DNA of 64,000 bases from Macrostomum lignano. Its lineage: Eukaryota. The DNA lies in contig NIVC01000102.1 in assembly GCA_002269645.1 (NCBI GenBank), positions 763,950-827,949 of the forward strand, written 5' to 3'. The notes beneath the pieces are model-generated. The model saw nothing but the letters and a program-made list of their open reading frames with translations. It was not told the DNA's origin and did no database searches. Shown here in pieces: positions 1,069 through 45,247 of this stretch; within the stretch, counting starts at the first letter, position 1; each line of letters begins with the position of its first letter. The position numbers were made by a program, and so were the translations under genes.

Positions 1069-2587
1069 ATGGGCACTAGAGAGCCAAATTTACCCGAGAC
1101 TCTCGAGCGGCCTGAAGTTGTTGTTCTTGATGATCTAGAGAGTAACTTTCCCGAAATCGACAACGTGGTAAAGACAGACGGAGTTCTTTCAGTCGGTATA
1201 AACTTCGACAAATTTGAGGCGACAGTTCTGGAGAAACATAAAACTGACAGTTTTGAAACGGCCTACGATACTCGAGGTAATCCTAGAGGTCTCTGTCTCA
1301 TCATTAACAATAAAAGTTTTGCTGGTAAACTCAAAGACAGAATCGGAACGGATGTTGACCGTGATAATTTGAGCAATCTGTTCAGCAAACTTCTGTACAA
1401 AGTGGAGATTGTCAACAACCAAACTGCCGAGGGAATGAAGGAAGCATGCAGGCGCTTCATTCTCAATCCGGAGCACGAACAGTACACCTCATGCGTCTTG
1501 GCGGTTCTGTCGCACGGCACAAATGGCAAAATACTGGGCTCGGACAGCAAGCCTGTGGACGAGTACAAGGACATCCTTTCGCTGTTTAACAATCCAGATT
1601 GCAGGCTAGCCGGTAAACCGAAGTTTGTCATCATTCAGGTAAATATACATGCAGGACAAACTGTACATTACTTTAAAACAGCCAAAGCCTCGATGCATTT
1701 CGCGGTTTTGAAACTTCAAGGCTTACCTCGCTGAATATAATTCCTAAGACACAGTACATCTCTATTCTTATATTAAACCCCAAAAGACTAACGCAGAATA
1801 AAAGCAAGTGGCACAAAAGACCGGCAGACGCGGCCCAGAAAGGGAAAACGAACCCCTTAAGCGACGAAATATATTGATTTTGTAATTTAAAAGAGAAAAA
1901 AAAATATTTTGCCAAAATTACGCCGACTCAGCGGCCGCGACGCGTGACTAAATAGCACAGAGCGGGGGGGAGGCTGCCCTAAGCCCTGCACGCACGCAGA
2001 GCACCAGCACCCCACCAACCCACCAAAGCGAGGCCAGGCCGGCGCGGGGGGGGGGGGTTTAAAACCAGTTAAAGTCAGATACCTGCCTCAAACTGACGTA
2101 TTTTACCTCCGCCATTCATGTGCGAAACACCTGGCAGGCCTGTCGAATCAAATTGGACGAAACTGACGACAAAGGCAAACTGCAGCATTCCATGGCCGGT
2201 CAGGAGGTCAGTGACGGTCCAATGGTTGAAGGCGACAAAAAATTCGACCTCGTGGAGCATCTCCAACGGCTCAACTATAGAGATGCCCAACGGGTGGAGA
2301 ACAGGCTCCCGCCAGACTACGCGGACCTGCTCATCGCCCACTCCACCTTGCCTGGGTACCTCAGCTGGCGCAACACCAAGCGAGGCAGTTGGTTTATCCA
2401 AGCCATCGTGCAAATCTTCTGGAGAAACTTTCACTCCGAGCACGTGGCCGACATGATGGTGCAGGTGAACTTGCTCGTTAGTAAGGCGTTCCGCGGCGAG
2501 AACAAGGAGAACAAGAACCAGGCATGCCAGATGCCCAGCCCTACCAACCATCTGCGCAAGAAGTTCTACTTTTTCCCCAGCAAGTGA
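1069..2587 (+). CDS. Caspase (peptidase C14), two exons: 1069-1638 and 2138-2587; an upstream exon is possible
   Basis: p20 motifs RGLCLIINN, RIGTDVD, VLSHG (catalytic His) and GKPKFVIIQ; phase-0 intron CAG|GTAAAT...CAG|GCC restores QACR. p10 motifs ADLLIAHSTLPGYLSWR, GSWFIQ and QMP..LRKKFYF. An acceptor-like TCAG at 1051-1054 leaves an open frame into the ATG. Confidence 0.92.
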
Positions 2588-6016: not shown

Positions 6017-6317
6017 TAATTTCCTTTGAGTGAACGATTTACGGGTTATACATGTATAATACGAACACTTCGGCTGACCTTAAACCTCAGAAAGCAGGAG
6101 AGATACCATCACTTAATCTACAAACCAAGAACTTCTAGTGGTCCTTGCTACAAACAACACCAGTGCTTGATGAACTATAATAAGTAGAGAAATCAGCTAG
6201 GAGTTTACTATTTTATTTATCTAATTTCTTCCAAAAATGTTTAACCCCAAACGGCGCGAAATCTGTGTCACTCAGCTTTTTTTTGAGCACGTATCTGCGT
6301 CTCCGAAGCCGGCAGAA

Positions 6318-9300
6318 CTACTGCAGTGCATCAAGTCTCTTCAACTTCTCCTTGACCCAGCCGATCTTCTCCTCGTCCTGCGTCTCCATGGCGACGCGTC
6401 TCTCTTTCTCGATCATCTCCATCTGCTGCAGGCTGAGCTCTACGTGCTCGCGGCAGTCGCTGTAGTGAGCCAGAGTGAGCAGCTCCTCCAAGTCCGGGTC
6501 TTCTTCCAGCTCTCGTTTCCAATCCTCCAGTTGAATTACAGGTGCGCGATTGCGGAGCAGGTCAGCTTGGAGACTCCAGCTCAGGCAGCGGAAGTTCACG
6601 TACAGGTGGGAGGAGAGAGGCTGCGACAGTCTGGCTGTAAACAGAGTCTGCGTGAACTCGGGAAGGAATGGGAAGCGAGGCGAAGAGTCGCAGGGGAGGC
6701 AGAACCTCCACGCCCAGTCTGAGTCTTCTGGCAGTTTAGCTGGGTCATATGGGGACACTTCAATATTCTCTGGCTTCAGCCCTGACTCAACCTGATGTCT
6801 CTGCAGCTCCATCGCGAGTCTCTGAGCCTCCTCAGATTCTCCGAACTTCAAATGCGCCATGGCGGTCATGCACAGGGCGGCGCACTTGCACCACTGCAGC
6901 TCATGCAGGAGACTGAGCTGCCTCATCAGAGTGTCTCTGTCGCTCGATTCCGACTGCAGCTCGCTCACACACTGGTGCACCACACTGTACACGTCTGCGA
7001 ACTTTACGAAGTGTAAGTATTCAGGCTGTTTTTTGATCCCCGTGACAGCAGGCGGCGCTGTCAGAGGCAGCAGAGTGAACGGGTGAAAGTAGAACTTCTC
7101 TGACTGCAGAGGTCTCACGAGTCTCCTCAGCTGCTCGACCACTCCGCCGATGTCGCTTCTCAGCTCACATAGTCGGTCTCGAACCCTCGCCTTCGTGTTG
7201 TCGAAGTCGCCGCCGATTCCAGCGTTCTTGAAGTAGAGCGGAGCGTCGGGCATGAAGAAGTGCGGCATGCACTCATCCGGCGAGCTACTCGAGTCGATGA
7301 AGCTCAGCATCATGTCGAGAGACTCCTTGAGCAGAGCGATCAGATTGTGGGGCTGCCAAGCCTCAGTTTCAGAATTTGCGCCATGCTTTTCCAGCATTGC
7401 GAAGAGCAGAGTCTTTGCATGGTAGGTCTTGAGTCCAGGTGTGTCCAGCGTGAGTGGCAAGTGTCTCTTGAAGATGAACTTGATGAGTGTGAACAGCTGG
7501 CCCTGGACTGTGCTTAGCTGTCTCATGGTGTCTTTCTCTTGTAAGCTGAAGCTCACTCTGAGCTCGTTGGCTGAATTGGGTCGGGTGGCTCTTACGAGAT
7601 GAAGTGGCGCTTCATTTCCCATATTCAACGGGAAGCCCGATCCCAACCTCGCATTTGTCGATCCATTGCAGCACCGGATCGCGTGGCAGAGGTCCTGCGC
7701 AGGCCGCACTCCGCAGGCCGGGCTGCTCTTAGCTGGCTGGCTACCTGTGGTGAACACCCAATGAAAGCGTCGAGTGGTTTCTTATTTCAAAAATAAGAAA
7801 CTGACTTTACAAAACGTATAAAAACTGACCAGATCCGGTGGCAACAACTGCGTGACCCTCCGAAACCGGAAGCACTGGAGCGGTTTTGCATCCATCTGAC
7901 TGCCGCATGCAGAATCCTTCCAGATGCAGAGCTTGCCCATCAGCCAGCACAGTCCAGTCAATGTCCGAGTCTGCAGCTGTCCTGCCGTTCACCTGCTCCA
8001 GACTGTTGGCCCAGCCCTCTGCGTAGCTGCCCGTCATGTGCATGCGACCATTGTCCTGTGCGAGGACTTGAGCTGTGGATTCCAGAACTGAGGCCAAACT
8101 CTGCTGGCACTGAGCTCTCTCTTGAGTGAAGCCCGCTGCTTTGAGCAGTGCGTGCAACTTCTCACTGAGTTGCCAGTCGTGCTCTTCATCATCTATGGCT
8201 CTATAAGGATTTTCAAGCAAATTTAAGAGGTGGTTTGCTCTGCTGCGATTCAATAGAAAGCCAATGTGGAACTTTGAAAGATGACACACACTTTTAGAGA
8301 TTCATTTTAATACACTAAAACTTCAGTCTAAGTGTTCTCTCTGTGTTCGACCCACTGACTTGTTGGCGGCAAAGCCGCTCGTCTTTGTACCATGGACGAG
8401 TCAAGAACTCATGATGAGATAAAGCGATACGTTCTCCAAGAATAATTAGCCATGTTTTCATGCATTCTCAAGCTACAATGCCTGTAAACCGCTGCACTAT
8501 GGATCCTGCAACTGCATAAAAATATTTCCTTGCTTATAAATACTCGTACACCAAGTACAAAACTTTAAAATTTGAAAAAAAACTTGAATACTGTAATAAC
8601 TGTCTTCTATGTACGCCCATAGCACTAGAAATTTGTTGGCCAATCAAGAAATACACGTATAAAGAAAGGTAGCAGTCAGCGAATACTCACATCATAATAT
8701 TAAAAAACTTCTGGCATTTTGGCTTCTCGCTCTGTCTGAAGTTAGAAAGAAAATTTCCTTTCAAGTGAATGTCGCCTTCTGAGTGTATTTTATCGAACTA
8801 CTCACCCAGATATCAATTGCATGAGCTGCTGTGAGTGACCGAACTGCTCAGCCAACTGACCACACGTCAGACTCCGACCGTCTCGATGACTCGCATCCGC
8901 TCCTCTGTCCATCAGAGCCTTGGCTGCTCGCACGTGACCGGCTTCGCACGCTCGTGACAGAGCAGTCCGACCCTGACTGTCTTCAGCACGCACTGACGCA
9001 CCGAGATCGATGAGGTTCTCAATGAGCTCGTGATGACCTGCATCAGCTGCCAGCATAAGAGCAGTGGCTCCAGTGCTGTCTGGCAGATCGACATGCTGTG
9101 TGCTGACTCGCTCATCCTTGATCAGTGTGACAGCAAGAGCGACGTGCCTTTGAGAGATGGAGAGACAGAGCAGCTGTGTGATTTGAGCTGGCTGCATTCT
9201 AGAGAGGGTGTCGTTGAGAACAGAGTTCCTGCCTTCGATGGCCATTGCTGCAGTGAAGCTGAGGATGGTGCTGTATTGGAAGAGCCAGTCGGGCTCGAGG

Positions 9301-12300
9301 CCTAGGTAGGCAACGATATGTTCGTGAAGACGAGAGCAAGCCGCCATTGCGCACTTGCGTCTAGAAAGCAGTTTTTTGTTTGCAGACGTCTCTCTGTCAA
9401 GAATTTCTTTCAAAATTTCCACGTGGCCATCCTTTGCAGCAGTCTCCCCAACCTGAAGGCAAAAATCTTTAGCAATAGCTGAATCTGCAATAGTCTGCAA
9501 GAGACACTTCACTAACTTCCAGTTGCGACCACTTGCCGCTCGTTTTGCCGCCTCGATGCAATAAAAATCGCGAACCTGATGGCTGGACACCGCATCAATG
9601 AGGTATTGAAGTTCTTTAGGTGGTTCTGGTCCTGAGAAATAATTGATCGCACTTGCGACTTCCATGCAGAACTGATCCTTGAAGCCGTTCGCACCAGCAG
9701 CCTGCACCAAGCGTTTGACGGAGCTCAACTTGTTCTCATCATTGGCGAAGACTTCTGACCTCATACAGCATTGGCTTCGCTGCTTCTGGTCCGCAACAGT
9801 CTGAACAAGCAACTGGAAACATTTCAATCGACTGTGACTAGCTGCTGATTTCGCAGCAAGGAAGCAGATCTCGTCCTTGTCGTTCGGGTCAGCGACTGTT
9901 GACAGGAGAAATTCCAGTACTTCAGATTCCCCACAGCGTGCTGCTGCTACAGCTGCATCTCTGCAACAGTTTCTGCGCATTGCAGCATCCGCAATCGAGC
10001 TTAAATAGGATTTTAAACTTTCCAGGTCACCTGATTGTGCAGATATAATTGCCACCAGCATTCTAAACTGGTCCTGCGCTTGAGAACTTGAGGCGGAATC
10101 AAATATAATACAAAGAAAGTCGTCATTTACGCATGCGACTTTCAGTGGAACAAAACATCTTAAAATGGCTTGCAGGCAGCACTGGTCTTTGTCAAATGGA
10201 TCAGGAATTGCCTGTAGAAGTAGATTTATTGTATCAAAATGATTATCCTCGGCTGCCGTTTGAACTATCGCCTCGCCAGCAGAGATTTTATTACCTAACT
10301 CAGTCTTTGTTTGCAGAAACTGTTTCACTATATCCAACTCGCGGGCACTGACTGCAGTGTTTGCGGACTTCCTGCAGTTCTGATCATTTAATTTTTGGTC
10401 TATGATTATATTCAGTACCTTATTCACTTCATCCCACATTTTAGGTTTAGTAAAGTGGCTCGCAAGATCCAGCAAAAACTTACTTCTCATGCTCTTGTTG
10501 ACGATATTCATTGCAAAGTTTATCGCTTCAGTTGACATTCGCGGATTGCTTTGCAAAACATCCGAAAAAAATTTTTTGTTATACGACATTGCCGCAAAGC
10601 ACAGATCTCTCAAACCCTGACCGATGATTCTCCGTAAAAAGAACTTCACTTTGCTCCATCCATACTTCTCCATAAGTGCAGCTGCTGCCGCAATGCAGCA
10701 TTCATTCTGAGCGTCGATATCAACTACTGAAGCAAGCAAAAATGTCAAAAATTGCCAGTTACGAGTACTTGGCGTCGCAGATGTGACAATCTCCAAGCAG
10801 CACTTGTCTTTTATGCTTTGAGCAGCGACTCTCTTCATAAAATTCTTTGCAATATCAATTTGACCTTGTTGAGATGCAGATTGAGCCAAAACTCTGCAGC
10901 AGTCATCTTTCACTGTCTGGTCTAAAATTAAGTTTATCAGAAAGGACCAGGCTGGCCAGTGGATTTTGCTCGAAGCTCGAATCAGTTCAGAGCAGCAGCG
11001 ATCTTTTAAATCTTGGTCCGAAATCGCTTGAACAAGGAAATCCACGAACGTCCAATAGCTGTTTTGCGCAATGAGTTTTTTGTGTTCTGACGTACTGATG
11101 TCGGTTAAAACCTCCTCACTGCACTTATTCCTTAGAGACTTTGAGGAAAGTTTAAAGAAGAAGTACTTAGCCTCTTTTATGCATCCAGTCGATGCATGGT
11201 ACTTCACAGACTGCATGCAGCACTCGTCCTTTACATCTTGGCGCACAACTCCAGGCAACATGCATTTCACCAGCCCAAACTGGTTGCTCCGTGCGGCAGA
11301 CTCTGCAGCTCTTGCCCAGCACTGCTCCTGCACGCTCCGCTCTGACGCCCTCTGCACAGCGAATTGCACGACTTCGAGGCGACCAACTGCTGCAGCAGAT
11401 TCTGCGGCTTTGAGACACCACTGGTCTTTTACTTGACCGTCAGAAAGAGACTCAAATAACATTTGCAACGCTGACACCTGATGCTTGACCTCTTTGTCAT
11501 CTCCTTCATTGTCCCTGATTAAATCGGTTTGGTCTCCACCAAGACGCAACGACTCAGTATTGCTAGAAAAACCTTTGATAGCTTCCTGAGTAGCCTCAAT
11601 GCAGCACTGGTTTTTCGTGCTCTGATCAGAAATCGACTCGAGCAGAAACTGCAGCTCGGGTGTTTGACTTTCGCTAGCTGCCGATTTTGCAGTCTCTTTG
11701 CAGCACTCATCCTTGACCTTCTGATCAGCAATGCAATGCACCAAGTCTTTCGTCAGATCAAGGCGTCCGGCCTCGGCGTAGATGACTGCGACCTTGCTGC
11801 AGCACTGGTCTTTTGCGCTTCTGTCGGTGATTCGCTCGGACAGAAACTGCACGGTATCGAACAGGGCGAATGCGGCTGCGAAGCATGCGGACTCGGAGCA
11901 GCACCGGTCTGTCACCGCTGGGTCGGAGGCGGCCTGCAGCAGGAGCTTCACAACCTCCCACTGGGACTCGCTGGCTGCGAGTTCGCACACCTCGCTGCAG
12001 TAGCTGTTCTTGAGGTCCTGGTCAGAAGTTTCTTGAAGCAGAAATAGGAACAGATTCCAGTGACGCTCGCTTACAGCCAAGTTCATTGCCTTCAGACAGC
12101 AGCTATTCTTTACCTTGGGGTCAGCCGCAGTCTGAACCAAAAACTTGATTGTCTCCCATTGACTCGACCTTGCAGCAGACTTCACCGTCTTCTGACAGCA
12201 CAGGTCTTTCACAGATTGATCAGCGATCGCTTCCACAAGGAACTTCAGCATCGCCCATTCGTTTGACAGGGCGGCGACTTTTGCAACTTCGAGGCAGCAC

Positions 12301-12500
12301 TCGTCCTTTAGGCTCGAGTCTTCAACTGCTTGCACAAGAAGTCTGACGATTTCCCACTGGCGAGAGCGAGCAGCCAACCGAGTCAGTTTGTGTGCAGTTT
12401 TGCCTCTCTCAGCTCCATCACTGATTGCCTGTAGGAATGCCTCAACCGACTGCAAGTCTCCGATGGCCACAGCATCCTTGATATTGGCTGGTTCGGCCAT
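6318..12500 (-). CDS. Ankyrin-like repeat / cGAS-like (Mab-21, cGLR) nucleotidyltransferase fusion, ~1860 aa; exons 12500-8806, 8290-7830, 7744-6318
   Basis: Donor GG|GTGAGT at 8805 (phase 2) matches acceptor CTCTAAAAG|T at 8291. Donor G|GTCAGT at 7829 (phase 1) matches acceptor CACCACAG|GT at 7745. Total 5583 nt = 1861 codons with no internal stop. NTase motifs GSYAEG...DSDID and DLCHAI; Mab-21 motifs LRVSFSLQEK, LKTYHAKTLLF and MPHFFMP; canonical ANK repeats GATALMLAADAGH and GRTALSRACEAGH. Confidence 0.85.
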
Positions 12501-13498
12501 TTGCCTTTTGAATTCTCGGCTGTGCCCCCGAGAACAGTTTAGTGGGCCTTAAACAGATGGGATGTAAATTACTGGTTTGAAGCTTGATGATATCGTCAAT
12601 CTATAAATTGGTTGGACTTTTTACTTTGTGTAACTTTTATATCTAGATACATTTACTTATCGATAATAAACTGTTTAAAAAAGCAACGATTTTATGTTAT
12701 TGAACGAGTTTTACTAATCTACCCCAGAGCAATACATTTTATCCAAGTAGACTTTTGCTGTTTAAAGTCTAAAATAACTGAAACTTTTAAACTGAGCTTA
12801 TTTACAAAATTTAATGGTTTTAGGATGAATGCATCCGAAAACATTGATTGTGATTCGCACTTTGTACAAAATATCCAACTTGAGAACTGAAATTACTGCT
12901 AATGAAAATTTAATGAAAGCTCGTATTTTATTAAACTTCTGAATGTACGAACTAAACTGATAAAGGCATAAACTAAGCGAGTGTAGTAAATTCAGTACAA
13001 ACCGATTTCGTATACGGTAGATTAGTGGCCTTTGGCTCGGCGTAATAAGCTTTTGGCGTAATCCGACGCTATTACTAAATGAGAAAACTGAGACTTGTGC
13101 GTACGCGCCTCGATCTTCTGGCTAAAAAATTATTGCTAGGTAAGTGTTTTTTCCTTGCCGATGCTTTTATTAAAACCTTCAGTTGATTCGCAAAGATCTT
13201 CGCTCACAATCTCAAGACAAGAGCTGCCGTCCATTATTTGTTTATTCATGCACCTTTTTATGCGATGCATACGAGGGTACGCATACGAGGGTACGCGTAA
13301 GATAGCTGAGACTGTACAGCCCTGTCTTCTGTCTTCGCTTTTAATCAACACGGCTTTTTATAGCTGTATGTGACCATGTATACAGTACATTTTGTCAAAA
13401 TAGAGATTCTGCACTGAACCTTGCTTTCGCTTCGCTTATTTCGCATGAATTTTTGCTGCAATTACATGCACATTACAACCTCTATTGTGCTGTACTAT

Positions 13499-13730
13499 TA
13501 AACTTGTTTTCTTGTACAATGAAACTTGATTGTCTTGTACCGGTTGAACTTGTTTTCTTGTACAATTAAACTTGATTGTCTTGTACTATTGAACTTGTTT
13601 TCTTGTACAATTAAACTTGATTGTCTTGTACCGTTGAACTTGTCTTCTTGTACAATTAAACTTGATTGTCTTGTACTATTGAACTTGTTTTCTTGTACAA
13701 TTAAACTTGATAGTCTTGTACTATTAAACT
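13499..13730. repeat. 45-bp tandem repeat (dimer of related 22/23-bp monomers), ~5 copies
   Basis: AACTTGTTTTCTTGTACAATTAAACTTGATTGTCTTGTACTATTG repeats; 15-aa periodicity in ORF 13526..13756. Confidence 0.9.
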
Positions 13731-13754
13731 TTTCTGATACTTTTGACTTGTCTT

Positions 13755-14052
13755 GACTATTGAACTTGTCTGGTACTATTGAACTTGTCTTGTACTATTG
13801 AACTTGTCTTGTACTATTGAACTTGTCTTGTACTATCGAACTTGTCTTGTACTATTGAACTCGCCTGGTACTATTGAACTTGCCTGGTACTATTGAACTT
13901 GCCTGGTACTATTGAACTCGCCTGGTACTATTGAACTTGTCTTGTACTATTGAACTCGCCTGGTACTATTGAACTCGCCTGGTACTATTGAACTCGCCTG
14001 GTACTATTAAACTTGCCTGGTATTATTGAACTTATCTCGGTATTGAACTTGT
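13755..14052. repeat. 19-bp minisatellite (TATTGAACTTGTCTTGTAC), ~15 copies
   Basis: Direct period-19 repeats with CGCCTGG variants toward the right end. Confidence 0.9.
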
Positions 14053-14306
14053 CAACAGAATTTGAAAACTATAGTATATTTAGAAAGAAAAAATTATAGA
14101 CTACACACTTTCTCGCATACTAATTGTCTATAAAATCTATAGTTGACGCTATTTTTATATTAAAAATATGAATAACAGAAGCAAAATATACATGTAACTC
14201 CCTTGCATATTAAACAGGCAATCTTAATCTACATGCTTTACAAACTGAAAACCGAAAATTCCTATAATTCATCAGATGCATCATAAAATCTTGCTATACA
14301 AAGACT

Positions 14307-16265
14307 TCAGTCTTTGTTGCCAGCAGCAGCCAGCAGACTGCTGCTAAGTTGCAGTGCAGCCAGCTGCACAATGACAGAGTACATCACGGCCGATGCAAAG
14401 CAGAGCCAGCCGCACCCCAGCACTTCTTCCCTATTGACACCGGCTGCTCCCAGAGCTGCATTGAACACTCCAGTTGCTAGGTTGCTCAACAGGAAGCTCA
14501 GAAATCCTGCCTGATCAAATTCGGCCAGGTATTTCAGCTGGAGCAGCTCGTTGCCAGCTCCTGCTGAGTCCTGTTGAGACAGGCAGCCGCGCAGATTGAA
14601 CAGGAGCGCGGCGCAGAGCAGACATGAGCAGGAGATGGCGACAGCCCAGGCACAGTAGGCCAAATTTAACAAGCGTCTGCTTTCCGGTAGAATCCAAGCA
14701 AACTGAGCCACAGCCAGAGGCCTCACAAGCAGCGAGGCCAGCAGGAGGCCGGAAATCTTCATCCAGCGCCGGTCCCTGACCCAGCGGCCCAGCTGCACGC
14801 CAGCAAAGTACAACACCAGTAGGCCCGGTATGGAGGCCAGGCCTTCACGATTCTGACCAATCAGGCTGGACCGATTGTAGGGCTCGTAATGGCCAGGCGC
14901 GAGCACGGCTTTGGCCAAACCCGTCGCTAGGACGGCTTCGTGAGCCAGCGCTAGCAGCAACGCCAGGAGCAGCGGCGGTAGCGGCTGACGCATCAGCGTG
15001 GTGAGAAGCTCCAACGCCGTACCCAGAGCTCGAGCGATGGCCAACGAATAAAATGCGCTCCAGTGGACTCCGTATTCCCACCATTCGGCTGCGAAGCGCA
15101 GATGTGTCGGCGGGAACGGGTCCTTTAGCTGATCCGGGTCGGTCAGCTGGACCTGAGCTCGGTTTCTCATGACACGGTTGAATGCCAGCGACCTCTGTAG
15201 GATGATGCAAAGTCCCAGCCCGGTCAGGATGGCTGACTGACGGGTGCAGCGTCTGAGCACGCGGGAGCTGTGGGTGGAGTTGGGTCAGGATGTGAGGGGG
15301 AGTTGGGTCAGGATGTGAGGGTTGTAGTTGGGTCAGGATGTGAGGGGGAGTTGGGTCAGGATGTGAGGGGGAGTTGGGTCAGGATGTGAGGGTTGGAATT
15401 GGGTCAGGATGTGAGGCTGGAGTTGGGTCAGGATGTCGTGGAGTTGGGTCAAGATGTCGTGGAGTTGGGTCAGGATGTGAGGGTTGGAGTTGGGTCAGGA
15501 TATGACATGTGAAGGTTTGGAATTGGATCAGGATGTGAGGGTGAAGTTGGGTCAGCATGTGAGGGTGAGTTAGGTCAGGATGTGGAGTTGGGTCAGGATG
15601 TGAGGCTGGAGTTGGGTCAGGATGTGAAGCTGGAGTTGGGTCAGGATGTCGTGGAGTTGGGTCAAGATGTCGTGGAGTTGGGTCAGGATGTGAGGGTTGG
15701 AGTTGGGTCAGGATGTGAGGCTGGAGTTGGGTCAGGATGTCGTGGAGTTGGGTCAAGATGTCGTGGAGTTGGGTCAGGATGTGAGGCTGGAGTTGGGTCA
15801 GGATGTCGTGGAGTTGGGTCAAGATGTCGTGGAGTTGGGTCAGGATGTGAGGGTTGGAGTTGGGTCAGGATGTGAGAAGTAGTTGGGTCAGGATGTGAGG
15901 CTGGAGTTGGGCCAGGATGTAAGGGGGAGTTGGGTCAGGATGTGAGGGAGGTCTATCATCGATGATGCAACAATTACAGTAAAGCACCAAGCAATCTCAC
16001 CGATCCACACGCATGCGAGAACTAGATGACTGAGCAGTGGGTGCCACGGTGCCCAGACAGATAACAAAGCAACCGATGCCCAGGTCCATGAGGCCCGTTC
16101 CGAAAGTCTTGGACTTGCTAAACCGGTTATTCCAGCAGGGCAGGTCGCGACAGAAGATGCACAGAGAGGTGCAGATGTACAGGGCGCAGCGATAGGCAGA
16201 CAGAATCGGATCGAATGGCTGCTTTTCAGTAATGAGACAAGCAGAGTCAGCTGCTGATCTCCCAG
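14307..16265 (-). pseudogene. PIGW: PIG-W/GWT1 paralogue, 5'-truncated; exons ~16265-16001 and 15267-14307
   Basis: An exon missed by the ORF track reads PILSAYRCALYICTSLCIFCRDLPCWNNRFSKSKTFGTGLMDLGIGCFV and ends CG|GTGAGA (phase 2). Acceptor CCCACAG|C at 15268. The last exon has EYGVHW, NREG, SRRLLNLAY and SNLATGVFN. Upstream the frame enters antisense integrase DNA and hits a stop with no ATG. Confidence 0.8.
15272..15950. repeat. Intronic minisatellite, 21-25 bp unit (GGAGTTGGGTCAGGATGTGAGGCT)
   Basis: Fills the PIGW(-) intron 15268-16000; source of ORFs 15379..15822, 15582..15875 and 15697..15882. Confidence 0.92.
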
Positions 16266-17520
16266 AACTGTTTTTCCAAGTACCTGACGGCCGTGGCGAT
16301 TCCTGACCAGACTGCTGAGACTACTGCTCGCGCCTTCCTCTCCATCTGCTCCCAGACTGGACTTCCCCGAGTCACCCACTGCGATCAAGGACCGAATTTC
16401 GAGTCTCAGCTTTTTCAAGACACTCTGCGAGGCCTGGGAGTCACGAAGACAAGAACAACGGCTTACAATCCCAAAGGCAACGGATTAGCGGAGTCGGGCA
16501 ACAAGTCAGTGCTGCAGTTACTCAGGTGTTTCACCGAGCGAGAGAGCGAGTGGGAGGACAAGCTGCCACTGATCCTGCTGTCCTACAATTCCCGGGTGCA
16601 CTGCTCAACACAGCTGCCGCCACTGAAGGTGTTCACCGGGCGCGATCCGAGCCTGCCGGTCATCAGCCAGCAGTCCAGGCGATTCTATGACGTGCGCACC
16701 TACGCCGACAAGCTCGAGGGCGACCTGCTGCGAATTCGAGAGTTTGTCGAGGAGCATCTGGTGCAGGCGGCTGGCGAGCAAAAGAGCGGCTACGACAGGT
16801 CGACCGGGCAGCTGCGCATGTTCAGTCCTGGAGACGAGGTCCTGCTGCGCATCGAGCTGAGGGGCTCCAAGCTGGCGCCTTACTGGGAGCTGGGCTGGCA
16901 GGTGCTGTCGCAGCGGGATCTGGTAGTCGAAATCCAAAAGATCGAGAACGGCCGGACCCGCAGGGTGAATGTGAATCGTCTGCGGCCGCGGATCCTGCCA
17001 GTCCCTGACGGAGAGCGCTTCCTGCAGCCGCCCTTTGCGCACGCGGCTCACGGCGGCGATGAGGCGGACGAGGAGCCGCCCCCGAGACGCTACCCGGTGC
17101 GTAGGCGGATGCCGGTGGATCGCTATGTGGCCGGTTGAATTTTTGATTGACTCAGTGACTGTTCGACTGACTGTTGCGAATTATTTGAAAGCGAGAAATT
17201 CTTTATAACAATATTGTTCGAATGTTTTACTGTTCTTATGTTTCCTTCGAATTATTCGTTCGAATGTTATTGATCTTTTTCGCCGGGGAGGATTGTAGTG
17301 AGTTGCAAGTGTACTTGTATGCGCCAGTCGCTAGAGCGGGGTGGGGGTTGCTATTGTACAGCATGTACGTGCTTTTCACCCACCCCTGTCTCTATCTTTT
17401 ATACCCAGTTATGTAACAATCGTTGTATCGTATTTAACCTGCGTATCGATCTAATAAACGCCAAGAGGCTTCGTCAACTCTCAGTTGTATCTCTCTGCCT
17501 TAGTCTACAATTGCACTACA
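16266..17520 (+). mobile_element. 5'-truncated Gypsy LTR retrotransposon remnant: integrase C-half plus 3' LTR (17294-17520)
   Basis: CFSKYLTAVAIPDQTA, HCDQGPNFES, TTAYNPKGNGLAES and RRYPVRRRMPVDRY. PPT GGGGAGGA precedes an LTR bounded by the perfect inverted termini TGTAGTG...CACTACA, with AATAAA inside. No 5' LTR, gag or RT. Confidence 0.85.
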
Positions 17521-17589: not shown

Positions 17590-18772
17590 GATTGCTATTG
17601 GGGGAGGGGAGGCTTGCTATGTGGGGAATGCTTGCTATCTGGGGAATGCTTGCTATCTGGGGAATGCTTGCTATGTGGGGAATGCTTGCTATGTGGGGAA
17701 TGCTTGCTATGTGGGGAATGCTTGCTATCTGGGGAATGCTTGCTATGTGGGGAATGCTTGCTATGTGGGGAATACTTGCTATCTGGGGAATGCTTGCTAT
17801 GTGGGGAATGCTTGCTATGTGGGGAATGCTTGCTATGTGGGGAATACTTGCTATCTGGGGAATACTTGCTATCTGTGGAATGCTTACTATCTGGGGAATG
17901 CTTGCTATCTGGGGAATGCTTGCTATCTGGGGAATGCTTGCTATGTGGGGAATGCTTGCTATGTGGGGAATGCTTGCTATGTGGGGAATGCTTGCTATGT
18001 GGGGAATGCTTGCTATCTGGGGAATGCTTGCTATGTGGAGAATGCTTGCTATCTGGGGAATGCTTGCTATGTGGGGAATGCTTGCTATGTGGGGAATACT
18101 TGCTATCTGGGGAATGCTTGCTATGTGGGGAATACTTGCTATCTGGGGAATACTTGCTATGTGGGGAATGCTTGCTATGTGGGGAATACTTGCTATCTGG
18201 GGAATGCTTGCTATGTGGGGAATACTTGCTATCTGTGGAATGCTTACTATCTGGGGAATGCTTGCTATCTGGGGAATGCTTGCTATCTGGGGAATGCTTG
18301 CTATCTGGGGAATGCTTGCTATGTGGGGAATGCTTGCTATGTGGGGAATGCTTGCTATGTGGGGAATGCTTGCTATGTGGGGAATACTTGCTATCTGTGG
18401 AATGCTTACTATCTGGGGAATGCTTGCTATCTGGGGAATGCTTGCTATCTGGGGAATGCTTGCTATGTGGGGAATGCTTGCTATGTGGGGAATGCTTGCT
18501 ATGTGGGGAATGCTTGCTATCTGGGGAATGCTTGCTATGTGGGGAATGCTTGCTATGTGGGGAATGCTTGCTATCTGGGGAATGCTTGCTATCTGGGGAA
18601 TGCTTGCTATGTGGGGAATACTTGCTATCTGTGGAATGCTTACTATCTGGGGAATGCTTGCTATCTGGGGAATGCTTGCTATCTGAAAAAAGCTTGCTAT
18701 CTGGGGAATGCTTGCTATCTGAGGAATGCTTGCTATCTGGGGAATGCTTGCTATCTGGGGAATGTTTGCTTG
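17590..18772. repeat. 18-bp minisatellite (GGGGAATGCTTGCTATGT/ATCT), ~65 copies
   Basis: Period-18 array with a few variant units; open in several frames on both strands, which produces the 364-533 aa artefact ORFs. Confidence 0.97.
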
Positions 18773-21075: not shown

Positions 21076-22922
21076 GAAGCTGCAGGCACCGCCAGACAAG
21101 AGGAACCATGGATGGAGCGATTTATTAGTAAAACCATATTTCTGACACAATCAAAGTGACTGTCAACAACCGTGTGTAAGTGTCCAAAACTGATCACCTA
21201 ATAATGAAAACATCCCCTCTCTGTTTAGAGTACACAGAATTTTGTTCAATTTCTCAATGCGACCTTCTGACGCCGAAAAACAATGTATTTAGCAACATTT
21301 CGATAGAAATTCGGAATAATAATCAATAACTGCTGGAAGAGAGATGTTTAAAGAAGCTCCATTGTAGTGGTGTCTGCAGAGCTCGTGTCTGTTTGTTTTA
21401 TCAAATCTATCTATAGTTTGTAATTTTTACCTGGTGTTATTACGAAGTACAAAAAAGTTCAAATCCATAATACGAGGGTTCAAAAGTTTTAACAGTTTAC
21501 ATGTACATTGTCACTATTGTCGACAAGTCACAATGAAAAATTCCGCTACATGTAATTAAACTTTATTCTGCAGTTCATTATCCAAGCTTTTGCTTTCGAT
21601 TTTCGACCAAACCTTCTCTGAAAAACAAACAAGCTGTTTTCATCCAAAATCTGTTTGAGCTTTTCAAATATATTTAACATCAGATACTCCAATACTCTGA
21701 TGCTTGAACAGTTTCCATCAAAATTTTATTGTCACTTAGGATTCAGGCTTCATTGTAGAGTAGTGTCAGTGGATCTATTGTCCATTGATTTTATCAAATC
21801 TAGTTTGGAATTATTACCCAATTTTATTACGACCTGATAGATATTACCTACATATGTGTGACTTTGTGAAAGCACAAATCTTTGATACGAGCGTTCAATA
21901 CAGTTTACTTATTCACTATCGTCGAGCATGAAGTCCCAATAAAAACTCAGCTATTTAAATTTTATGTTGCAGTTCATTAGCCAAGCTTTTACTTCGATTT
22001 GCAACCGAACCTGACAATCAAAACTGTTAGTTTTTAAAAATAAAATTCAGTTTGAGCTATCACAATATATTTGACCTTAGTATACTTGTACTCTGATGCA
22101 TGAACATGCAGTTTCCACCAAGTTACTTGTCAAAAGTTCATCCGTTTAAAGGCCTGAAAAAATTTGCGAAAAAGAATTCGCACAACATATTACATACGAT
22201 TTAATGTCCTTTACAATCCTTTTCTAATGCTATGCCATCTTCTAATTCGAACGGATTCTGCTGTGTTCTTGAGAGCTTACAACCGAGATCGCGGTTGGTT
22301 AAATTCTTCCTTGTCTCAACTTTGTCGTTAACTCAAATAGAGCATGGGACTTCAGTTTGTGAATTAAGCTCCTTAAAAGCGAGGAAGAAAGAAGTGCCCC
22401 TAGGGCTGAGCTCCCGTCTTCTCAAAAATACCCACAAGTTCATCCCCTGCCGTCGATGGGGTGGGATGTCGCGTGGTTAACGACGTCAAGTTTGACACAA
22501 ACAGCGCTTGCAATAAGATTAGCATTCAACACGTTGAGTTGCTACGGGGGTGAAGGTGAGGCGGTTAGACTCATCCGTTTACTCTGGTTGAGTTGAGTAT
22601 TTGGGGGAAGTCAGTCCTAAGTTCTTCACTGTCCTCTTGTGCGGCCCGGTCCGCGCGTCCATCCCTCGGTTGCTACGCTCCTCGGAGTTGGCCATCGGTC
22701 TTAGGGGCACCCGCTGGCTCCTCCCCAGGAGCGGCGTCCGTGCCGGGCTCATCTAATATTCTCCGGCCAAAGCCTTTGCCTGTCAGCTGCCTCATCTTTG
22801 AGCTTTAGTTACCTTTGAAATGGATGGTGGCTGCTGCAGTTTTTGCCTGCGTTGCCGCATTCCACTAAAGACCCCTGATTGTTTGCTGGATTCCATTGTC
22901 TTGGTTGCATCATTGTTTATGT

Positions 22923-24900
22923 CGTTCAGCCTGGCTGACGGTCCGTGCCAGCTGTTTGTGTTCGACAAGTGCAGCAAGTCGGTGAGGAAGATATCTCAAT
23001 TTCATGGGTCTCTCATGGGTCTCAAGACTGCGCTCAACCTGGCTGGCGACACGGCCGAAGAGCGCAGAAACGAGCTGCGCACCTTCTTCGCCGCCATTGT
23101 CAACGCGCCGCCGCCGACTCTGCCGAACGAGATGCCGCTGCCCCCCGAGGTGGCGCTGCCGCGGCAGGAGGACTTCGACACCCGTCCTGTGACCAGCACC
23201 GACGTCGTGGAATTCGCCCGCAGGGCTCCGGGAGACCGCACCCCCGGCACGGACGAGGTCCCCGTCGAGGCGCTGCGAGTCACAAGGGTTGCCACTGAGG
23301 TGGCCCGCGTGATGAACGGCGTCCTGGCGGGAGGCCCCGCGCCCCGCGAGTGGACCCAGGCCAACATCGTCGGCATCCCGAAGAAGCCGGGCACTACACG
23401 GAAGGAGGAGCATCGTGGAATCTCGCTCATGTCCTGTACCGCGAAGCTGTTCAATCGGGTGCTATTAGCACGGTTACAGCCCGTGCTGGACTCGTTCCTG
23501 CGGTACGAGCAGAACGGGTTCCGCCCCCATCGCGGTACGGTGACGCAGATCCTGGCCCTCCGCCGCATCATCGAGGAGGCGCGCATCCACCAGTCAAGCC
23601 TTATCGTCATCTTTGTTGACTTCCTCAAGGCCTTCGACTCGGTGGCGCGCGGCGCGCTGCCTCACGTGCTCCGTGCCTACAACGTACCGCAGCAGCTGAT
23701 CTCCGCCATCATGGCGCTGTATCAGGACACCACCGCCGCGGTAGCGACGCCAGACGGACCGTCGGACCTGTTTAGCACGACCTCCGGAGTGCTACAGGGT
23801 GACACTCTGGCGCCCTTTCTCTTCGTGCTGGTGATGGACTGGGTGCTCAGGACCGGCCTGCCGACATCAGAGGACGGCTTTCTGCTGCAAAGGCGCACCA
23901 GTAGACGGCACCCGGAGAAGAAACTGTCTGTCCTTGGCTACGCGGACGACCTCGCCCTGCTGTCTTCCACGGCCGAAGGCGCCCAACGGCTGCTGGACGG
24001 CCTGACTGCGGCGGCGGCGAGGGTCGGTCTCGTCATCAACGCCAGGAAGACCGAGGTGCTGACGGTGCCACATGATCTACCCGCCGAGATTCGACTTCGA
24101 GACGGTGATGGCCCCGGGACGGCGCTCCTGAAGTGCCTTCAGTTCGTCTACCTCGGCGGGCTGGTGCCTGACGTCGGCGACGACCTAGCGAGACGGCGCG
24201 GCAAGGCGTGGGCTGCCTTTCGATCTGTGCGGGCGGTGCTGCTCTCCGAGGCCCTGTCCGACGGCGCCAGGTCCCAGCTGTTCCAGGCGGTTGTTGAGAC
24301 CGCCCTGCTGTACAATACTGAGACCTGGACGCTGACCGGGGCGCTTGAGGCGCAGCTCGACGCGGCGCATGCGGCCCTAGTCCGCGCCGCTTTCGGCGCC
24401 CGCCGCGGCCCTGGCAGCGAGACAACCGAGTCCCTGTACAAGCGCACAGGCCTGACGCGGCCTTCTGCCCTGCTGAGTCAGCGGCGACTGCGGCTTGCCG
24501 GACATGTCATCCGGGCCGAAGCCTACTGCCCAGAGCCGCTGCAGGACGTCCTGCTGTGGACCCCTCAGGGACCGCGCAGGCGTGGTCAGGGACGATCAGC
24601 CCGCTACGTCGACCGCCTTTTTGAAGATGCGCGAGCACCCAGCCAGACGGCCGGTGTGAAGCACATTAGAGACCTGGCTCTGAAACGCGCGATTTGACGC
24701 TCCCCCCTCTTGGCCACTCCGGTGGCTGGCGTGGGGCGTAACTATTATTATTATTATTATTATTATTATGGGTCTCTCGGATATCAGCGACTCGTACGGT
24801 GCTTCTTCCAATGTTCTGTGCGAGTGCCTGTCGCCTTTTGCTTTATTCTGAGAAACTAGGCACCGCCAGACAATAGGAGCCGTTCCAGATTGATTCACAA
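22923..24900 (+). pseudogene. Broken third lectin copy: PAN fragment 22923-22990, ~400-bp internal deletion, CTLD end split by an RTE insertion and resuming at 24768
   Basis: 22923-22988 is almost identical to copy 1 20519-20584 and joins directly to the equivalent of copy 1 20983. After the LINE, GGTCTCTCGGATATCAGCGAC...TGCGAGTGCCTGTCGCCTTTTGCT continues the lectin 3' end and its flank. Confidence 0.88.
23015..24767 (+). mobile_element. 5'-truncated RTE-clade non-LTR retrotransposon with an uninterrupted RT ORF to 24697
   Basis: RT motifs QNGFRP, QILALRRIIE, FVDFLKAFDSV, GVLQGDTLAPFLF and YADD; (TTA)n tail 24743-24767; 11-bp TSD ATGGGTCTCTC at 23004-23014 and 24768-24778; no endonuclease domain. 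Confidence 0.93.
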
Positions 24901-31182: not shown

Positions 31183-36503
<5,321 letters not shown>

Positions 36504-36814
36504 AACAGAATACTCTTTTCTGACTTATGCTGCTGCATTTTATCTTTGTCTTAAAAAGAATTTCCGCATGATCGACACACAGATTTGCTCACTGACAGGA
36601 TTTTTAATTAACCAGTTGTCTTTTTATGAGCTTACATTAAACTATATCATTTTTCTTATCAATGCTATGAGAAACTAAAGTAATTCATATTTTGGTGCCA
36701 AAAATTGTTAAAATAAAGGCTTTATAGACTTCTATTTGAATCGTACGCTAATACGTTTACACAGATACAGATTTTATGTGCATGGAAAATGTGCTACTTG
36801 GACTTTTTATGTCT

Positions 36815-43900: not shown

Positions 43901-45247
43901 TGACTTGGAAGTGGGCTCTGCTGGCATTGCATCGACCTCTGCAAGAGGCCTACCCCTCCCAGATGGTCTTCACCATCGCCTTCGGACTGCTGATGTTTCG
44001 CTGGGTGCATTTCCTCAGCTACTCGGGAGTCATCGGGCCGATCGTATCAATGCTGTGGAGTCTGCTGTTTAACGATCTGGCCCCGTTTATGGCCATCATT
44101 TCTGTGTTTATTTACGCTTTTGGAGTGTTCTTCTTCAACCTGCTTTTCCCGGTGACCAGTACGGACACGACTTCGAAAAAATATAACAGCAGTTGGTACG
44201 GATGGGACGCGTTCACTCAAGTTATGACTTTGCCGTTTAACATTTTGTTTACGAATTTCGACAAAATCGACTTCAACCCGCCATCGCTGACCAACGTTAC
44301 CATCGGCAAGACTGCTCACGTGCAGGGCATCGGCGTGTTCGAGAATCTGATGCTGTTCCTATTCATGGGGCTCGTGAACATTGTTATGCTGAACCTGCTG
44401 ATTGCTCTGTTCAACCTTCGAGTCAGCCGCATGGCCAACGAAGCCTTGGGGATCTGGCGCAAGACCTACTTTTCTATGCTACGAGAGTACGAGAGCCTCA
44501 GTCCCGTGCCGCCTCCTCTGTCCTGCCTCTGCTACATCTATAAGATGCTCAGCGACTGCTTTTGCTGCCAAACCAAAATCAGCCCTCACGGAGCTGAAGA
44601 CGAGAACAACAATAAGGTGCGTGTATCTATCTACTACCACATCCCAGTTAACCCATTATAAACTTGTCACTTGTGTCGGTATTTATATTATTTTTTCACT
44701 GTCTCGTTACGACAATTTCCTTTTTTAGAAATGGTGGCTCACCCCTAAGAACTACCCAGAGCGCTACCTTAGGTTTCTCCGCTTTCAAGCCATGCAGTTC
44801 CGCCGGATCCGACCGAAACTGCTGACCGACCCCGACTGGAGCCGGAAGGAGCTGAAGTCGTTGGAGGAGGGCCTCGACAATAAGCTGGCCGACATCGCTT
44901 GCAGTGGTGACGGATCGAGCCGCAGACCGCCGCTAAACCGTCACGACGCCCAAGATGACATCAGGCCGGAAAGAAATCTGACAGCTCAATCTAGCCGGGA
45001 AGACCTGAGCGGTCGGCCTCAAGTGGAGAGACAGCAGTCTGACACCAACTCAAAGCTGGACATCATAAATGCGCAGATGAATTCCATGGAATCGAGCATA
45101 AAAGGCATACAAGACCAGATTAAAGGCATCACAGAGCTGCTTGAGAAGAAACAGAAGAAGAGACGCCGACGACAGAAGACGCAAACTACTGAGCACTCGG
45201 ATGCGGCTGTAGGGAACCGAGACGTCAGAGCGGCTGAAACTGACTGA
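40924..45247 (+). CDS. Ankyrin-repeat TRP-family cation channel, ~1403 aa; exons 40924-44616 and 44729-45247
   Basis: More than 10 ANK-like repeats (NGATPLQLSA, NTAAHYAA, QTPLHIAM, NTCLHVAA); six-TM module with NFFD (S3), GPIVSML, NDL..F and NIVMLNLLIALF (S6); TRP box-like GIWR..Y followed by PVPPPL; C-terminal coiled coil. Phase-0 intron AAG|GTGCGT...TTTTTTAG|AAA. Confidence 0.9.

What the first reader, a model, noticed from the sequence alone, without database searches (positions are those of the whole stretch)
6318..12500. Hidden giant sensor-enzyme: ankyrin-like solenoid fused to a cGAS-like receptor
Seen: the 1232-aa ORF ends on a perfect donor (GG|GTGAGT; its TGA is inside the donor) whose phase matches the acceptor of the NTase exon, and a second intron joins the Mab-21 exon, giving one ~1860-aa frame. 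Established: cGAS/cGLR enzymes make cyclic-nucleotide messengers, and some invertebrate cGLRs carry accessory repeat domains. Inference: a ~1200-aa repeat solenoid may act as the ligand-sensing or autoinhibitory module of an NLR-like one-piece innate immune receptor; a repeat region this large would be unusual. Automated ORF calls would split it into three unrelated genes.
Basis: partly seen in the sequence, partly recalled or inferred. Interest (0 to 1): 0.9.

Follow-up and report, generated by a model that had tools for sequence, protein, structure and literature searches.

The report
Flatworm ankyrin-repeat cGAS-like receptor gene
This is a real four-exon gene of the flatworm Macrostomum lignano that fuses about 30 ankyrin-type repeats to a cGAS-like enzyme, but it is already in GenBank as one 1845-residue protein and belongs to a large, already described family, so it is ordinary rather than hidden.

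Summary
The three minus-strand ORFs at 12500-6318 do form one gene. The correct structure has four exons: 12500-8806, a 45-nt mini-exon at 8735-8691, 8200-7830 and 7744-6318. Its translation is identical to GenBank protein BOX15_Mlig015315g1 (1845 aa) of Macrostomum lignano, from an annotation built on RNA-seq transcripts. It missed the mini-exon and placed one acceptor at 8290 instead of 8200.

The N-terminus holds about 25-30 divergent 33-residue ankyrin repeats with a conserved Cys-Cys, followed by three canonical ankyrin repeats. The C-terminal part has a cGAS/Mab21 fold and the full cGLR active-site motif (GS 1304-1305, D1326, D1328, D1388). These residues are conserved in 96-106 of 108 paralogs.

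The architecture is not new. M. lignano has at least 82 clusters (at 50% identity) of such proteins, some longer. Li et al. 2023 already list ankyrin-fused M. lignano cGLRs and screened five of them, including a paralog 76% identical to this cGLR part. None of the five is marked active with dsDNA or dsRNA.

The function remains inferred: a ligand-gated nucleotide-signal synthase whose ankyrin array senses or regulates.

The parts
6318..12500 (-). Whole coding span of the gene (ATG at 12500, stop TAG at 6320-6318). It equals GenBank gene BOX15_Mlig015315g1 on NIVC01000102.1, positions 770267-776449.
   Evidence: The locus L002 gene span is identical to the window sequence, and the spliced CDS translates exactly to P0046.
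8806..12500 (-). Exon 1. It encodes aa 1-1231 plus two bases of codon 1232, covering the whole ankyrin region.
9390..12422 (-). Divergent ankyrin array (aa 27-1037). It has 25 in-register 33-residue units with consensus [SA]DQxVKDxCCxxAAxxAAxxxxWExVKFLLQxI. Irregular inserts lie at about aa 308-352, 436-484, 610-700, 779-836 and 915-971.
   Evidence: Repeat HMM and register analysis: spacing is 33 in 16 of 24 intervals, with Cys at unit position 10 in 21/25 and at position 9 in 16/25. Pfam on aa 1-1040 alone gives Ank_2 1e-18 and Ank_4 1e-18. AF2 predicts an all-helical array of 17- and 10-residue helix pairs, mean pLDDT 75.
8880..9137 (-). Three canonical ankyrin repeats (aa 1122-1207), preceded by a conserved helical linker/cap (aa ~1038-1121, 'LGLEPDWLFQYSTILSFTAAMAIEG...').
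   Evidence: Pfam Ank_2 3.2e-34, best stretch 1122-1207. This segment is 88% identical to paralog P0001.
8736..8805 (-). Intron 1 (70 nt), GTGAGT...TTCAG. If retained, the frame stops at once (TGA at 8804-8802).
8691..8735 (-). 45-nt mini-exon ((G)QSEKPKCQKFFNIM(I)) in the variable linker between the ANK and cGLR parts. It contains an in-frame ATG (8695-8693, M1246).
   Evidence: Present in deposited protein P0046. Paralog P0002 has a 14-residue exon at the same position.
8201..8690 (-). Intron 2 (490 nt), GTGAGT...CCTTATAG.
7830..8200 (-). Exon 3: the cGLR N-lobe, comprising the spine helices, the activation-loop motif MTGS (G1304-S1305, nt 8031-8026) and the catalytic D1326-I-D1328 (nt 7965-7957).
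7745..7829 (-). Intron 3 (85 nt), GTCAGT...CCACAG.
6318..7744 (-). Exon 4. It encodes the third catalytic Asp D1388 (nt 7694-7692), the 'HLVRATRP...ELRVSFSLQEK' segment, the Mab-21_C helix bundle (aa 1470-1540, nt 7448-7236), a family-specific C-terminal domain of about 230 aa (aa 1616-1843, nt 7010-6327) and the stop codon.
6212..6217 (-). AATAAA polyadenylation signal about 100 nt after the stop codon.

Best explanation
The locus is one four-exon gene of Macrostomum lignano. It encodes an 1845-aa cytosolic protein.

Domain order: an N-terminal superhelix of about 25-30 divergent ankyrin repeats, each carrying a conserved Cys-Cys; a conserved helical cap; three canonical ankyrin repeats; a short variable linker that includes the mini-exon; a cGAS-like receptor (cGLR) nucleotidyltransferase domain with an intact catalytic motif; and a family-specific C-terminal domain of about 230 aa.

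It is one member of a large M. lignano-specific expansion of ANK-cGLR genes.

Shown here: the gene structure, the fold, the motif and the family.

Inferred: like characterised cGLRs, the enzyme rests inactive and, on ligand recognition, makes a cyclic or linear oligonucleotide messenger for a downstream receptor. The fast-evolving ankyrin array supplies ligand or partner specificity, or holds the enzyme off until bound. The acidic cGLR core (pI 6.0) argues against classical binding of nucleic acid on a basic surface.
For: Gene structure: the spliced CDS equals the GenBank protein. That annotation derives from StringTie/TACO RNA-seq assemblies (PMC5730564). The same exon layout occurs in paralog P0002. 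There is no Met upstream of the spine helices in the NTase exon.

Fold: the AF2 model of the C-terminal 612 aa has pLDDT 85.5 and pTM 0.88. Its top Foldseek hits are cGAS (E 6e-7, TMt 0.52-0.55) and MAB21L1. The family profile against PDB finds cGAS at 3e-7 and cGLR1 (8gjy) at 2.9e-6.

Motif: the Li et al. criterion is h[QT]GS X8-20 [DE]h[DE]h X50-90 h[DE]h. Here it reads MTGS, X20, DIDW, X57, QDL. Conservation among 108 paralogs is G 106, S 105, D1326 103, D1328 101 and D1388 96.

Family: 45 clusters at 90% identity. In the library of 50%-identity clusters, 82 hits have E<1e-30. Every top-ranked hit that was looked up (nine, one of them unnamed) is from M. lignano, and the nearest outsiders looked up are bivalve proteins.

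Prior classification: Li et al. 2023 treat paralogs as cGLRs with Ank_2 domains.

ANK array: Pfam hits lie above cut-off. The array is the most divergent part between paralogs, at 20-50% identity against 78-88% for the cap and cGLR parts. P0047 has about 20 near-identical units, which indicates recent repeat amplification.

pI values are.
Against: No activity is shown for this protein. The five M. lignano family members in the Li et al. screen were NTase-domain constructs without ANK. One of them, PAA68676.1 (= P0002), is 76% identical to this cGLR part. All five have a blank 'Note' column where active enzymes are named, so no product was recorded with poly I:C plus 45-bp dsDNA.

Sequence methods align only the C-terminal lobe to cGAS. 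Assignment of D1388 as the third catalytic residue therefore rests on motif spacing, conservation and its position at the start of a predicted strand.

Presence of STING or another messenger receptor in M. lignano was not tested. [quoted passage not shown]

A sensing or autoinhibitory role for the ankyrin array is pure inference.
Confidence: 0.6

Rival explanations
1. The Mab21/cGLR domain is a non-catalytic scaffold or nucleotide-binding module, as proposed for MAB21L1. In that case the protein is mainly an ankyrin-based adaptor with no second-messenger output.
For: None of the five screened M. lignano paralogs is marked active. MAB21L1 is among the top structural hits. The Pfam N-terminal Mab-21 model does not hit. 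The core is acidic, with pI 6.0.
Against: The GS and the three acidic catalytic residues are kept in 96-106 of 108 paralogs across deep divergence down to about 25-30% identity. This is hard to explain without catalysis. Li et al. note that many genuine cGLRs are inactive in vitro for lack of the right ligand.
Confidence: 0.2
2. The locus mainly yields two separate proteins. One is an ANK-only protein, from retention of intron 1 with the stop at 8804-8802. The other is a stand-alone cGLR starting at M1246, if the mini-exon acceptor serves as a spliced-leader trans-splice site. On this view the fused model is a minor or read-through form.
For: The TGA lies immediately after the donor. An in-frame ATG sits at 8695-8693 at the end of the mini-exon. 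In M. lignano, 38.8% of genes are trans-spliced and about 7% of assembled transcripts are polycistronic precursors (PMC5730564).
Against: The deposited transcript-derived CDS is the fused one, and the annotation pipeline cuts at experimentally observed trans-splice and poly(A) sites. Dozens of paralog models carry ANK and cGLR in one protein. The Met is not conserved in the P0002 mini-exon. Intron 1 has no poly(A) signal.
Confidence: 0.1
3. One reading: 8806 joined to 8290, giving about 1860 aa.
For: The AG at 8292-8291 is in phase and the frame is open from 8289. Paralog P0011 shows weak similarity up to 8265, probably because its own model contains retained intron.
Against: The deposited protein lacks the residues encoded by 8290-8201 and contains the mini-exon. 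The 8290 acceptor has a poor pyrimidine tract (TCTCTAAAAG). The 8200 acceptor aligns with the paralog's acceptor.
Confidence: 0.03

Closest known systems
M. lignano ANK-cGLR paralogs listed by Li et al. 2023 (for example PAA68676.1 / BOX15_Mlig016402g1 and PAA93208.1 / BOX15_Mlig001946g3)
   Same: Same species and same domain order: CC-type ANK units, cap, three canonical ANK repeats, mini-exon linker, cGLR domain and C-terminal domain. PAA68676.1 (= P0002) is 76% identical over the cGLR part, and other close paralogs reach 78-79%. The catalytic motif and exon layout are the same.
   Different: This copy has a much longer ANK array: about 1257 aa before the core, against a median of about 300. 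Its linker exon sequence is unrelated, and its core is more acidic, with pI 6.0 against a family median of 8.1.
ANK- or TPR-fused cGLRs of other animals (Stylophora pistillata and others; Li et al. 2023, Fig. 1C, 4C, S2A)
   Same: A cGLR NTase domain fused to a helical-repeat, protein-interaction module. These proteins are also functionally uncharacterised.
   Different: They belong to different lineages, and 87% of cGLRs have no extra domain at all. The Cys-Cys ANK variant was detected in 41 of the 223 retrieved relatives, and the C-terminal domain in 97 of them. Neither was detected in the three bivalve relatives checked.
Human cGAS and Drosophila cGLR1
   Same: A bilobed Mab21/NTase cage, the GS activation loop, the [DE]h[DE] plus D triad, and the 'hLV...WRLSFSxxEK' segment.
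   Different: Identity is about 12-16%. There is no Zn-thumb insertion after the RVSFS segment. The GS-to-DxD loop is long (20 residues). The surface is acidic rather than basic (pI 6.0 against 9.07). Large N- and C-terminal additions are present.
MAB21L1/2
   Same: Same fold. It is a top structural hit (5eom).
   Different: According to Li et al., Mab21L1/2/3 lack a predicted functional active site. This protein keeps the motif.
Ankyrin-R / Ankyrin-B 24-repeat solenoid
   Same: A long array of 33-residue repeats. These give the best TM-scores among hits to the N-terminal model (4rlv, TMt 0.34; 8cs9), and Pfam Ank hits are present.
   Different: The TPLH/beta-hairpin part of each unit is replaced by 'KDxCCxxA', which is predicted as a continuous 17-residue helix. 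Overall structural matches are weak and are shared with TPR/HEAT solenoids.

Membership tests
cGLR (cGAS-like receptor), criteria of Li et al. 2023 | Active-site motif h[QT]GS X8-20 [DE]h[DE]h X50-90 h[DE]h | tested here: met
   M-T-G1304-S1305, 20 residues, D1326-I-D1328-W, 57 residues, Q-D1388-L. The first 'h' of the last element is Q here but V/M/I/F in many paralogs. The residues are conserved in 96-106 of 108 paralogs.
cGLR (cGAS-like receptor), criteria of Li et al. 2023 | Sequence homology across both the NTase core and the C-terminal helix bundle | tested here: inconclusive
   The helix bundle is clearly homologous: Pfam Mab-21_C scores 25.9 bits against a cut-off of 24.1, the family profile finds cGAS at 3e-7 and cGLR1 at 2.9e-6, and hhalign gives 88% probability. 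The N-lobe is not aligned by any sequence method used here. It is supported only by motif and structure.
cGLR (cGAS-like receptor), criteria of Li et al. 2023 | Predicted structural homology to cGAS/CD-NTases | tested here: met
   The AF2 model has pLDDT 85.5. The top 50 Foldseek hits are all cGAS or MAB21L1, with E from 6e-7, probability 1.0 and TMt 0.45-0.55.
cGLR (cGAS-like receptor), criteria of Li et al. 2023 | Ligand-dependent synthesis of a nucleotide second messenger | not testable with these tools
   This needs biochemistry. Five paralogs, as NTase-only constructs, are not marked active in Table S3 of Li et al..
cGLR-STING pathway | A STING (or other) receptor for the product in the same genome | not tested
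   No M. lignano proteome was searchable here. A word-indexed search seeded with human STING was judged unlikely to reach a flatworm ortholog and was not run. M. lignano does not appear in Table S5 of Li et al. as held.
Ankyrin repeat (Pfam Ank clan) | 33-residue helix-turn-helix repeats that match the Ank profiles | tested here: met
   Whole exon-1 product: Ank_2 3e-34. Repeat array alone (aa 1-1040): Ank_2 1e-18 and Ank_4 1e-18, both above cut-off. Paralog P0047 array: Ank_4 7e-89. The period is 33.
Ankyrin repeat (Pfam Ank clan) | Canonical TPLH motif and beta-hairpin finger | tested here: not met
   This applies to the 25 CC-type units, where TPLH is replaced by CCxxA and AF2 predicts one continuous 17-residue helix. 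The criterion is met only by the three C-terminal repeats at aa 1122-1207.
   No such Pfam hit occurs anywhere in the protein at E<=0.1. The resemblance is limited to a repeat module joined to a signalling module.

The most novel reading that the evidence does not exclude
The expansion of at least 80 ANK-cGLR clusters in M. lignano is a lineage-specific, diversified receptor repertoire. This would be in a phylum reported to have largely lost cGLRs and TLRs. On this reading, the rapidly evolving Cys-Cys ankyrin arrays, not the basic nucleic-acid surface of the enzyme, recognise ligands, perhaps pathogen proteins. They would relieve autoinhibition of the NTase. This would explain why NTase-only constructs of five family members were silent with dsDNA and dsRNA.
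Probability: 0.2. Interest if true: 0.65.

Novelty: new member of a known kind. Interest (0 to 1): 0.27.

Why it matters
The finding has modest value as it stands. It corrects the exon structure. It shows that UniProt's name for this protein ('ANK_REP_REGION domain-containing') hides a complete cGLR domain. It also places the protein at the long end of a very large flatworm-specific ANK-cGLR expansion. That expansion has been catalogued and partly screened (Li et al. 2023), but no member is marked active in that screen.

If the ankyrin arrays turn out to be the ligand sensors, the family would be a cGLR whose specificity module lies outside the enzyme. M. lignano is transgenic-tractable (PMC5730564) and would be a good system to study this. 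Nothing found here shows that.

Tried and rejected
Both were rejected when the deposited protein and the paralog alignment pointed to the mini-exon plus acceptor 8200.

(2) My first guess was that the third catalytic position is the invariant Ser in 'RVSFS', which would make a dead enzyme. I rejected this after the cGLR1 (8gjy) and cGAS alignments showed that this segment equals cGAS 'WRLSFSHIEK', downstream of the catalytic Asp. The Asp is in 'RPAQD'.

(3) The profile of full-length paralogs against PDB was swamped by ankyrin hits. I repeated it with a trimmed core alignment.

(4) hhalign of the core profile against human cGAS aligned only the C-lobe. No residue-level structural superposition was available.

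(5) An exact look-up of the bare 1232-aa ORF product found nothing, because the annotated product is the spliced one.

(6) A literature search for the gene identifier found nothing. Searches for Macrostomum with Mab-21, and for Macrostomum with STING and cGAS, found nothing relevant.

(7) Foldseek on the N-terminal model gave only generic alpha-solenoid matches (IFT-A, Ski3, ankyrin, mTOR) with low TM-scores. The ANK assignment therefore rests on Pfam.

(8) A search for STING in M. lignano was considered. It was not run, because the word-indexed search seeded with human STING would probably be filled with vertebrate sequences. The PDB list returned only human and mouse-like chains in its top 60.

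(9) The second large ANK ORF in the window (40924-44661) was checked as a possible paralog. It is an ANK plus multi-transmembrane, channel-like protein with no Mab21 part.
Full report
**What is in the sequence.**

On the minus strand, three ORFs lie head to tail: 12500-8802 (1232 aa), 8289-7807 (160 aa) and 7757-6318 (479 aa).

- The first ORF ends ...ATA TCT GG|GTGAGT, so its TGA is part of a consensus donor.
- The junction 7830/7744 has GT...AG ends and the right phase.
- Between the first and second ORFs there is a second perfect donor (GAT|GTGAGT at 8691/8690). It is preceded by a strong acceptor (TTTTCTTTCTAACTTCAG|A, exon start 8735). Together these define a 45-nt exon that keeps the frame.
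- At least three in-phase acceptors precede the NTase homology, with exon starts at 8290, 8242 and 8200.

**Which structure is real.**

A search with the N-terminal 1078 aa found a 100%-identical, 1845-aa protein. It is BOX15_Mlig015315g1 of Macrostomum lignano.

Joining 12500-8806, 8735-8691, 8200-7830 and 7744-6318 reproduces that protein exactly. The gene span is identical to NIVC01000102.1:770267-776449.

The GenBank annotation of this assembly was made from genome-guided RNA-seq transcript assemblies. Gene ends were set from observed trans-splice and poly(A) sites (PMC5730564). The junctions are therefore transcript-derived, although I did not see the reads myself.

Paralog P0002 (BOX15_Mlig016402g1) has the same layout: an ANK exon, an 84-nt intron, a 14-residue exon and a 99-nt intron, followed by the NTase exon. 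Its NTase acceptor aligns with 8200.

It was wrong about acceptor 8290, missed the mini-exon and overestimated the length.

An AATAAA lies about 100 nt after the stop codon. Intron 1 contains no poly(A) signal.

**The N-terminal part.**

Residues 27-1037 contain 25 units in a common 33-residue register, with irregular inserts in between. The consensus is [SA]DQxVKDxCCxxAAxxAAxxxxWExVKFLLQxI. Cys occupies unit position 10 in 21 of 25 units and position 9 in 16 of 25.

Pfam calls this region ankyrin even without the canonical repeats: Ank_2 1e-18 and Ank_4 1e-18. Paralog P0047 has about 20 nearly identical units ('ADQTKKDDCCIQAAQSAARNGHLEVVKFLVQTV') and scores Ank_4 7e-89.

AlphaFold2 (pLDDT 75) predicts an all-helical solenoid of alternating 17- and 10-residue helices. 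The ankyrin hairpin finger is replaced by a longer first helix. Three inserts have low confidence. Foldseek finds only generic solenoids, with the 24-repeat ankyrins giving the best TM-scores.

Residues 1122-1207 are three canonical ankyrin repeats.

**The C-terminal part.**

Pfam finds only Mab-21_C, just above its cut-off.

An AlphaFold2 model of the last 612 residues, built with 30 paralogs, is confident (pLDDT 85.5, pTM 0.88). All of its top 50 PDB matches are cGAS or MAB21L1. A trimmed family profile finds cGAS (3e-7), cGLR1 (2.9e-6) and MAB21L1 (4e-3).

The cGLR1 and cGAS alignments equate 'HLVRATRP...ELRVSFSLQEK' with cGAS 'FYLVPK...WRLSFSHIEK'. This places the third catalytic Asp upstream, in 'GVRPAQD'. 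D1388 lies at the start of a predicted strand.

The published cGLR motif is h[QT]GS X8-20 [DE]h[DE]h X50-90 h[DE]h. It is satisfied here as MTGS, X20, DIDW, X57, QDL. These residues are conserved in 96-106 of 108 paralogs with a near-complete core.

There is no Zn-thumb insertion, and the core is acidic (pI 6.0 against 9.07 for the human cGAS catalytic domain).

Residues 1616-1843 form a confident helical/small-sheet domain with no Pfam match. Its profile hits 97 of the 223 retrieved relatives but not the three bivalve relatives checked.

**Family and prior knowledge.**

| Measure | Result |
|---|---|
| Clusters at 90% identity matching the cGLR part | 45, all named ones from M. lignano, most with ANK |
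| Library of 50%-identity clusters, E<1e-3 | 1884 hits |
| Library of 50%-identity clusters, E<1e-10 | 410 hits |
| Library of 50%-identity clusters, E<1e-30 | 82 hits |
| Top-ranked hits looked up | nine; all eight with a source name are M. lignano |
| Nearest outsiders looked up | bivalve proteins (Mercenaria, Sinanodonta), E about 1e-17 to 1e-19 |
| N-terminal length before the core | median 304 aa; 49 of 144 above 500; 7 above 1000 |

This gene, at about 1257 aa before the core, is the longest among the GenBank (NCBI) models retrieved here. It is not an outlier of kind, because a 2111-aa transcript-based paralog exists.

Li et al. 2023 (bioRxiv 10.1101/2023.02.22.529553 / PMC9980059) bear directly on the claim.

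- They define cGLRs and report ANK- and TPR-fused cGLRs.
- Their Table S2 lists M. lignano proteins with Ank_2 domains. It also lists proteins from other records with ANK hits beyond residue 2000.
- They included five M. lignano proteins in a 140-protein screen. One is PAA68676.1 (= P0002), 76% identical to this cGLR part. All were NTase-domain constructs.
- None of the five carries the label given to active enzymes.
- The authors stress that many cGLRs are silent in vitro, probably because their ligands are unknown.

**Mechanism.**

Shown: a single transcript-supported ORF, a cGAS-type fold, a conserved catalytic motif, an ankyrin array that diverges much faster than the rest, and recent repeat amplification in a paralog.

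Inferred: the protein is a ligand-gated nucleotidyltransferase. Its ankyrin array provides specificity or autoinhibition. The acidic core suggests that the ligand is not bound as in cGAS.

Rivals:
- a non-catalytic scaffold;
- separate ANK-only and cGLR-only products, by intron retention or trans-splicing at the mini-exon, which ends with an in-frame ATG;

I rate these at 0.2, 0.1 and 0.03.

**Verdict.**

This is a real gene and the fused-domain reading is right. It is already annotated as one protein, and its architecture and family are published. What remains open is the biochemistry, which is open for the whole M. lignano clade.

Noticed in passing
window 1069-1734 (+): A 221-aa ORF with a caspase domain (Peptidase_C14, 3.7e-28). 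It is convergent with the cGLR gene and lies about 4.6 kb beyond its 3' end. It is probably one exon of a larger gene.
   Followed up: partly
window 40924-44661 (+): A single 1245-aa ORF with N-terminal ankyrin repeats (Ank_2 1e-19). Several hydrophobic helices in its C-terminal third resemble a TRP-type ion channel. It has no Mab21 part.
   Followed up: partly
window 14307-15260 (-): An ORF with a GWT1 (GPI-anchor inositol acyltransferase) domain, 2.2e-36. It lies upstream of the cGLR gene on the same strand.
   Followed up: no
window 22820-24697 (+); 54743-58299 (-); 16293-17138 (+); ~47915-49017 (+): Mobile-element remains. These are a reverse-transcriptase ORF, an LTR-retroelement pol (aspartyl protease, RNase H, integrase), an integrase fragment, and short ORFs near 47915-49017 that look like transposase fragments (not profile-tested).
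   Followed up: partly
window 13484-14053, 15269-15948, 17612-18770, 31361-32158, 33860-34771, 36813-39419, 61408-61987, 62915-63762: Many satellite-like tandem arrays with periods of 14-28 nt and up to 95 copies. One lies within 1-1.5 kb upstream of the cGLR start codon. GC skew is strongly positive around 14-20 kb and 36-40 kb, which overlaps several of these arrays.
   Followed up: no
window 7692-7911 (aa 1344, 1351, 1395-1396) and 7601-7599 (H1419): A Cys/His set in the NTase core is conserved across paralogs: C1351 in 101/108, C1396 in 100/108, H1419 in 98/108, C1395 in 82/108 and C1344 in 78/108. It could be a family-specific metal site.
   Followed up: partly
window 8693-8695 (-): An in-frame ATG (M1246) at the end of the mini-exon could start a stand-alone cGLR if the mini-exon acceptor were trans-spliced. 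The Met is not conserved in the P0002 mini-exon.
   Followed up: partly
L001 7581-24684 (paralog P0002 locus); P0007: The P0002 gene model spans a 17-kb intron between its NTase exon and its last exon. P0007 carries a second partial cGLR domain after the first. Both suggest tandem copies and chimeric gene models at other loci of this family.
   Followed up: no
P0047 (BOX15_Mlig034126g1), aa ~60-720: About 20 nearly identical 33-residue Cys-Cys ankyrin units in a row, which indicates very recent repeat amplification. In the window gene the units are too diverged for the tandem-repeat finder to detect at DNA level.
   Followed up: partly
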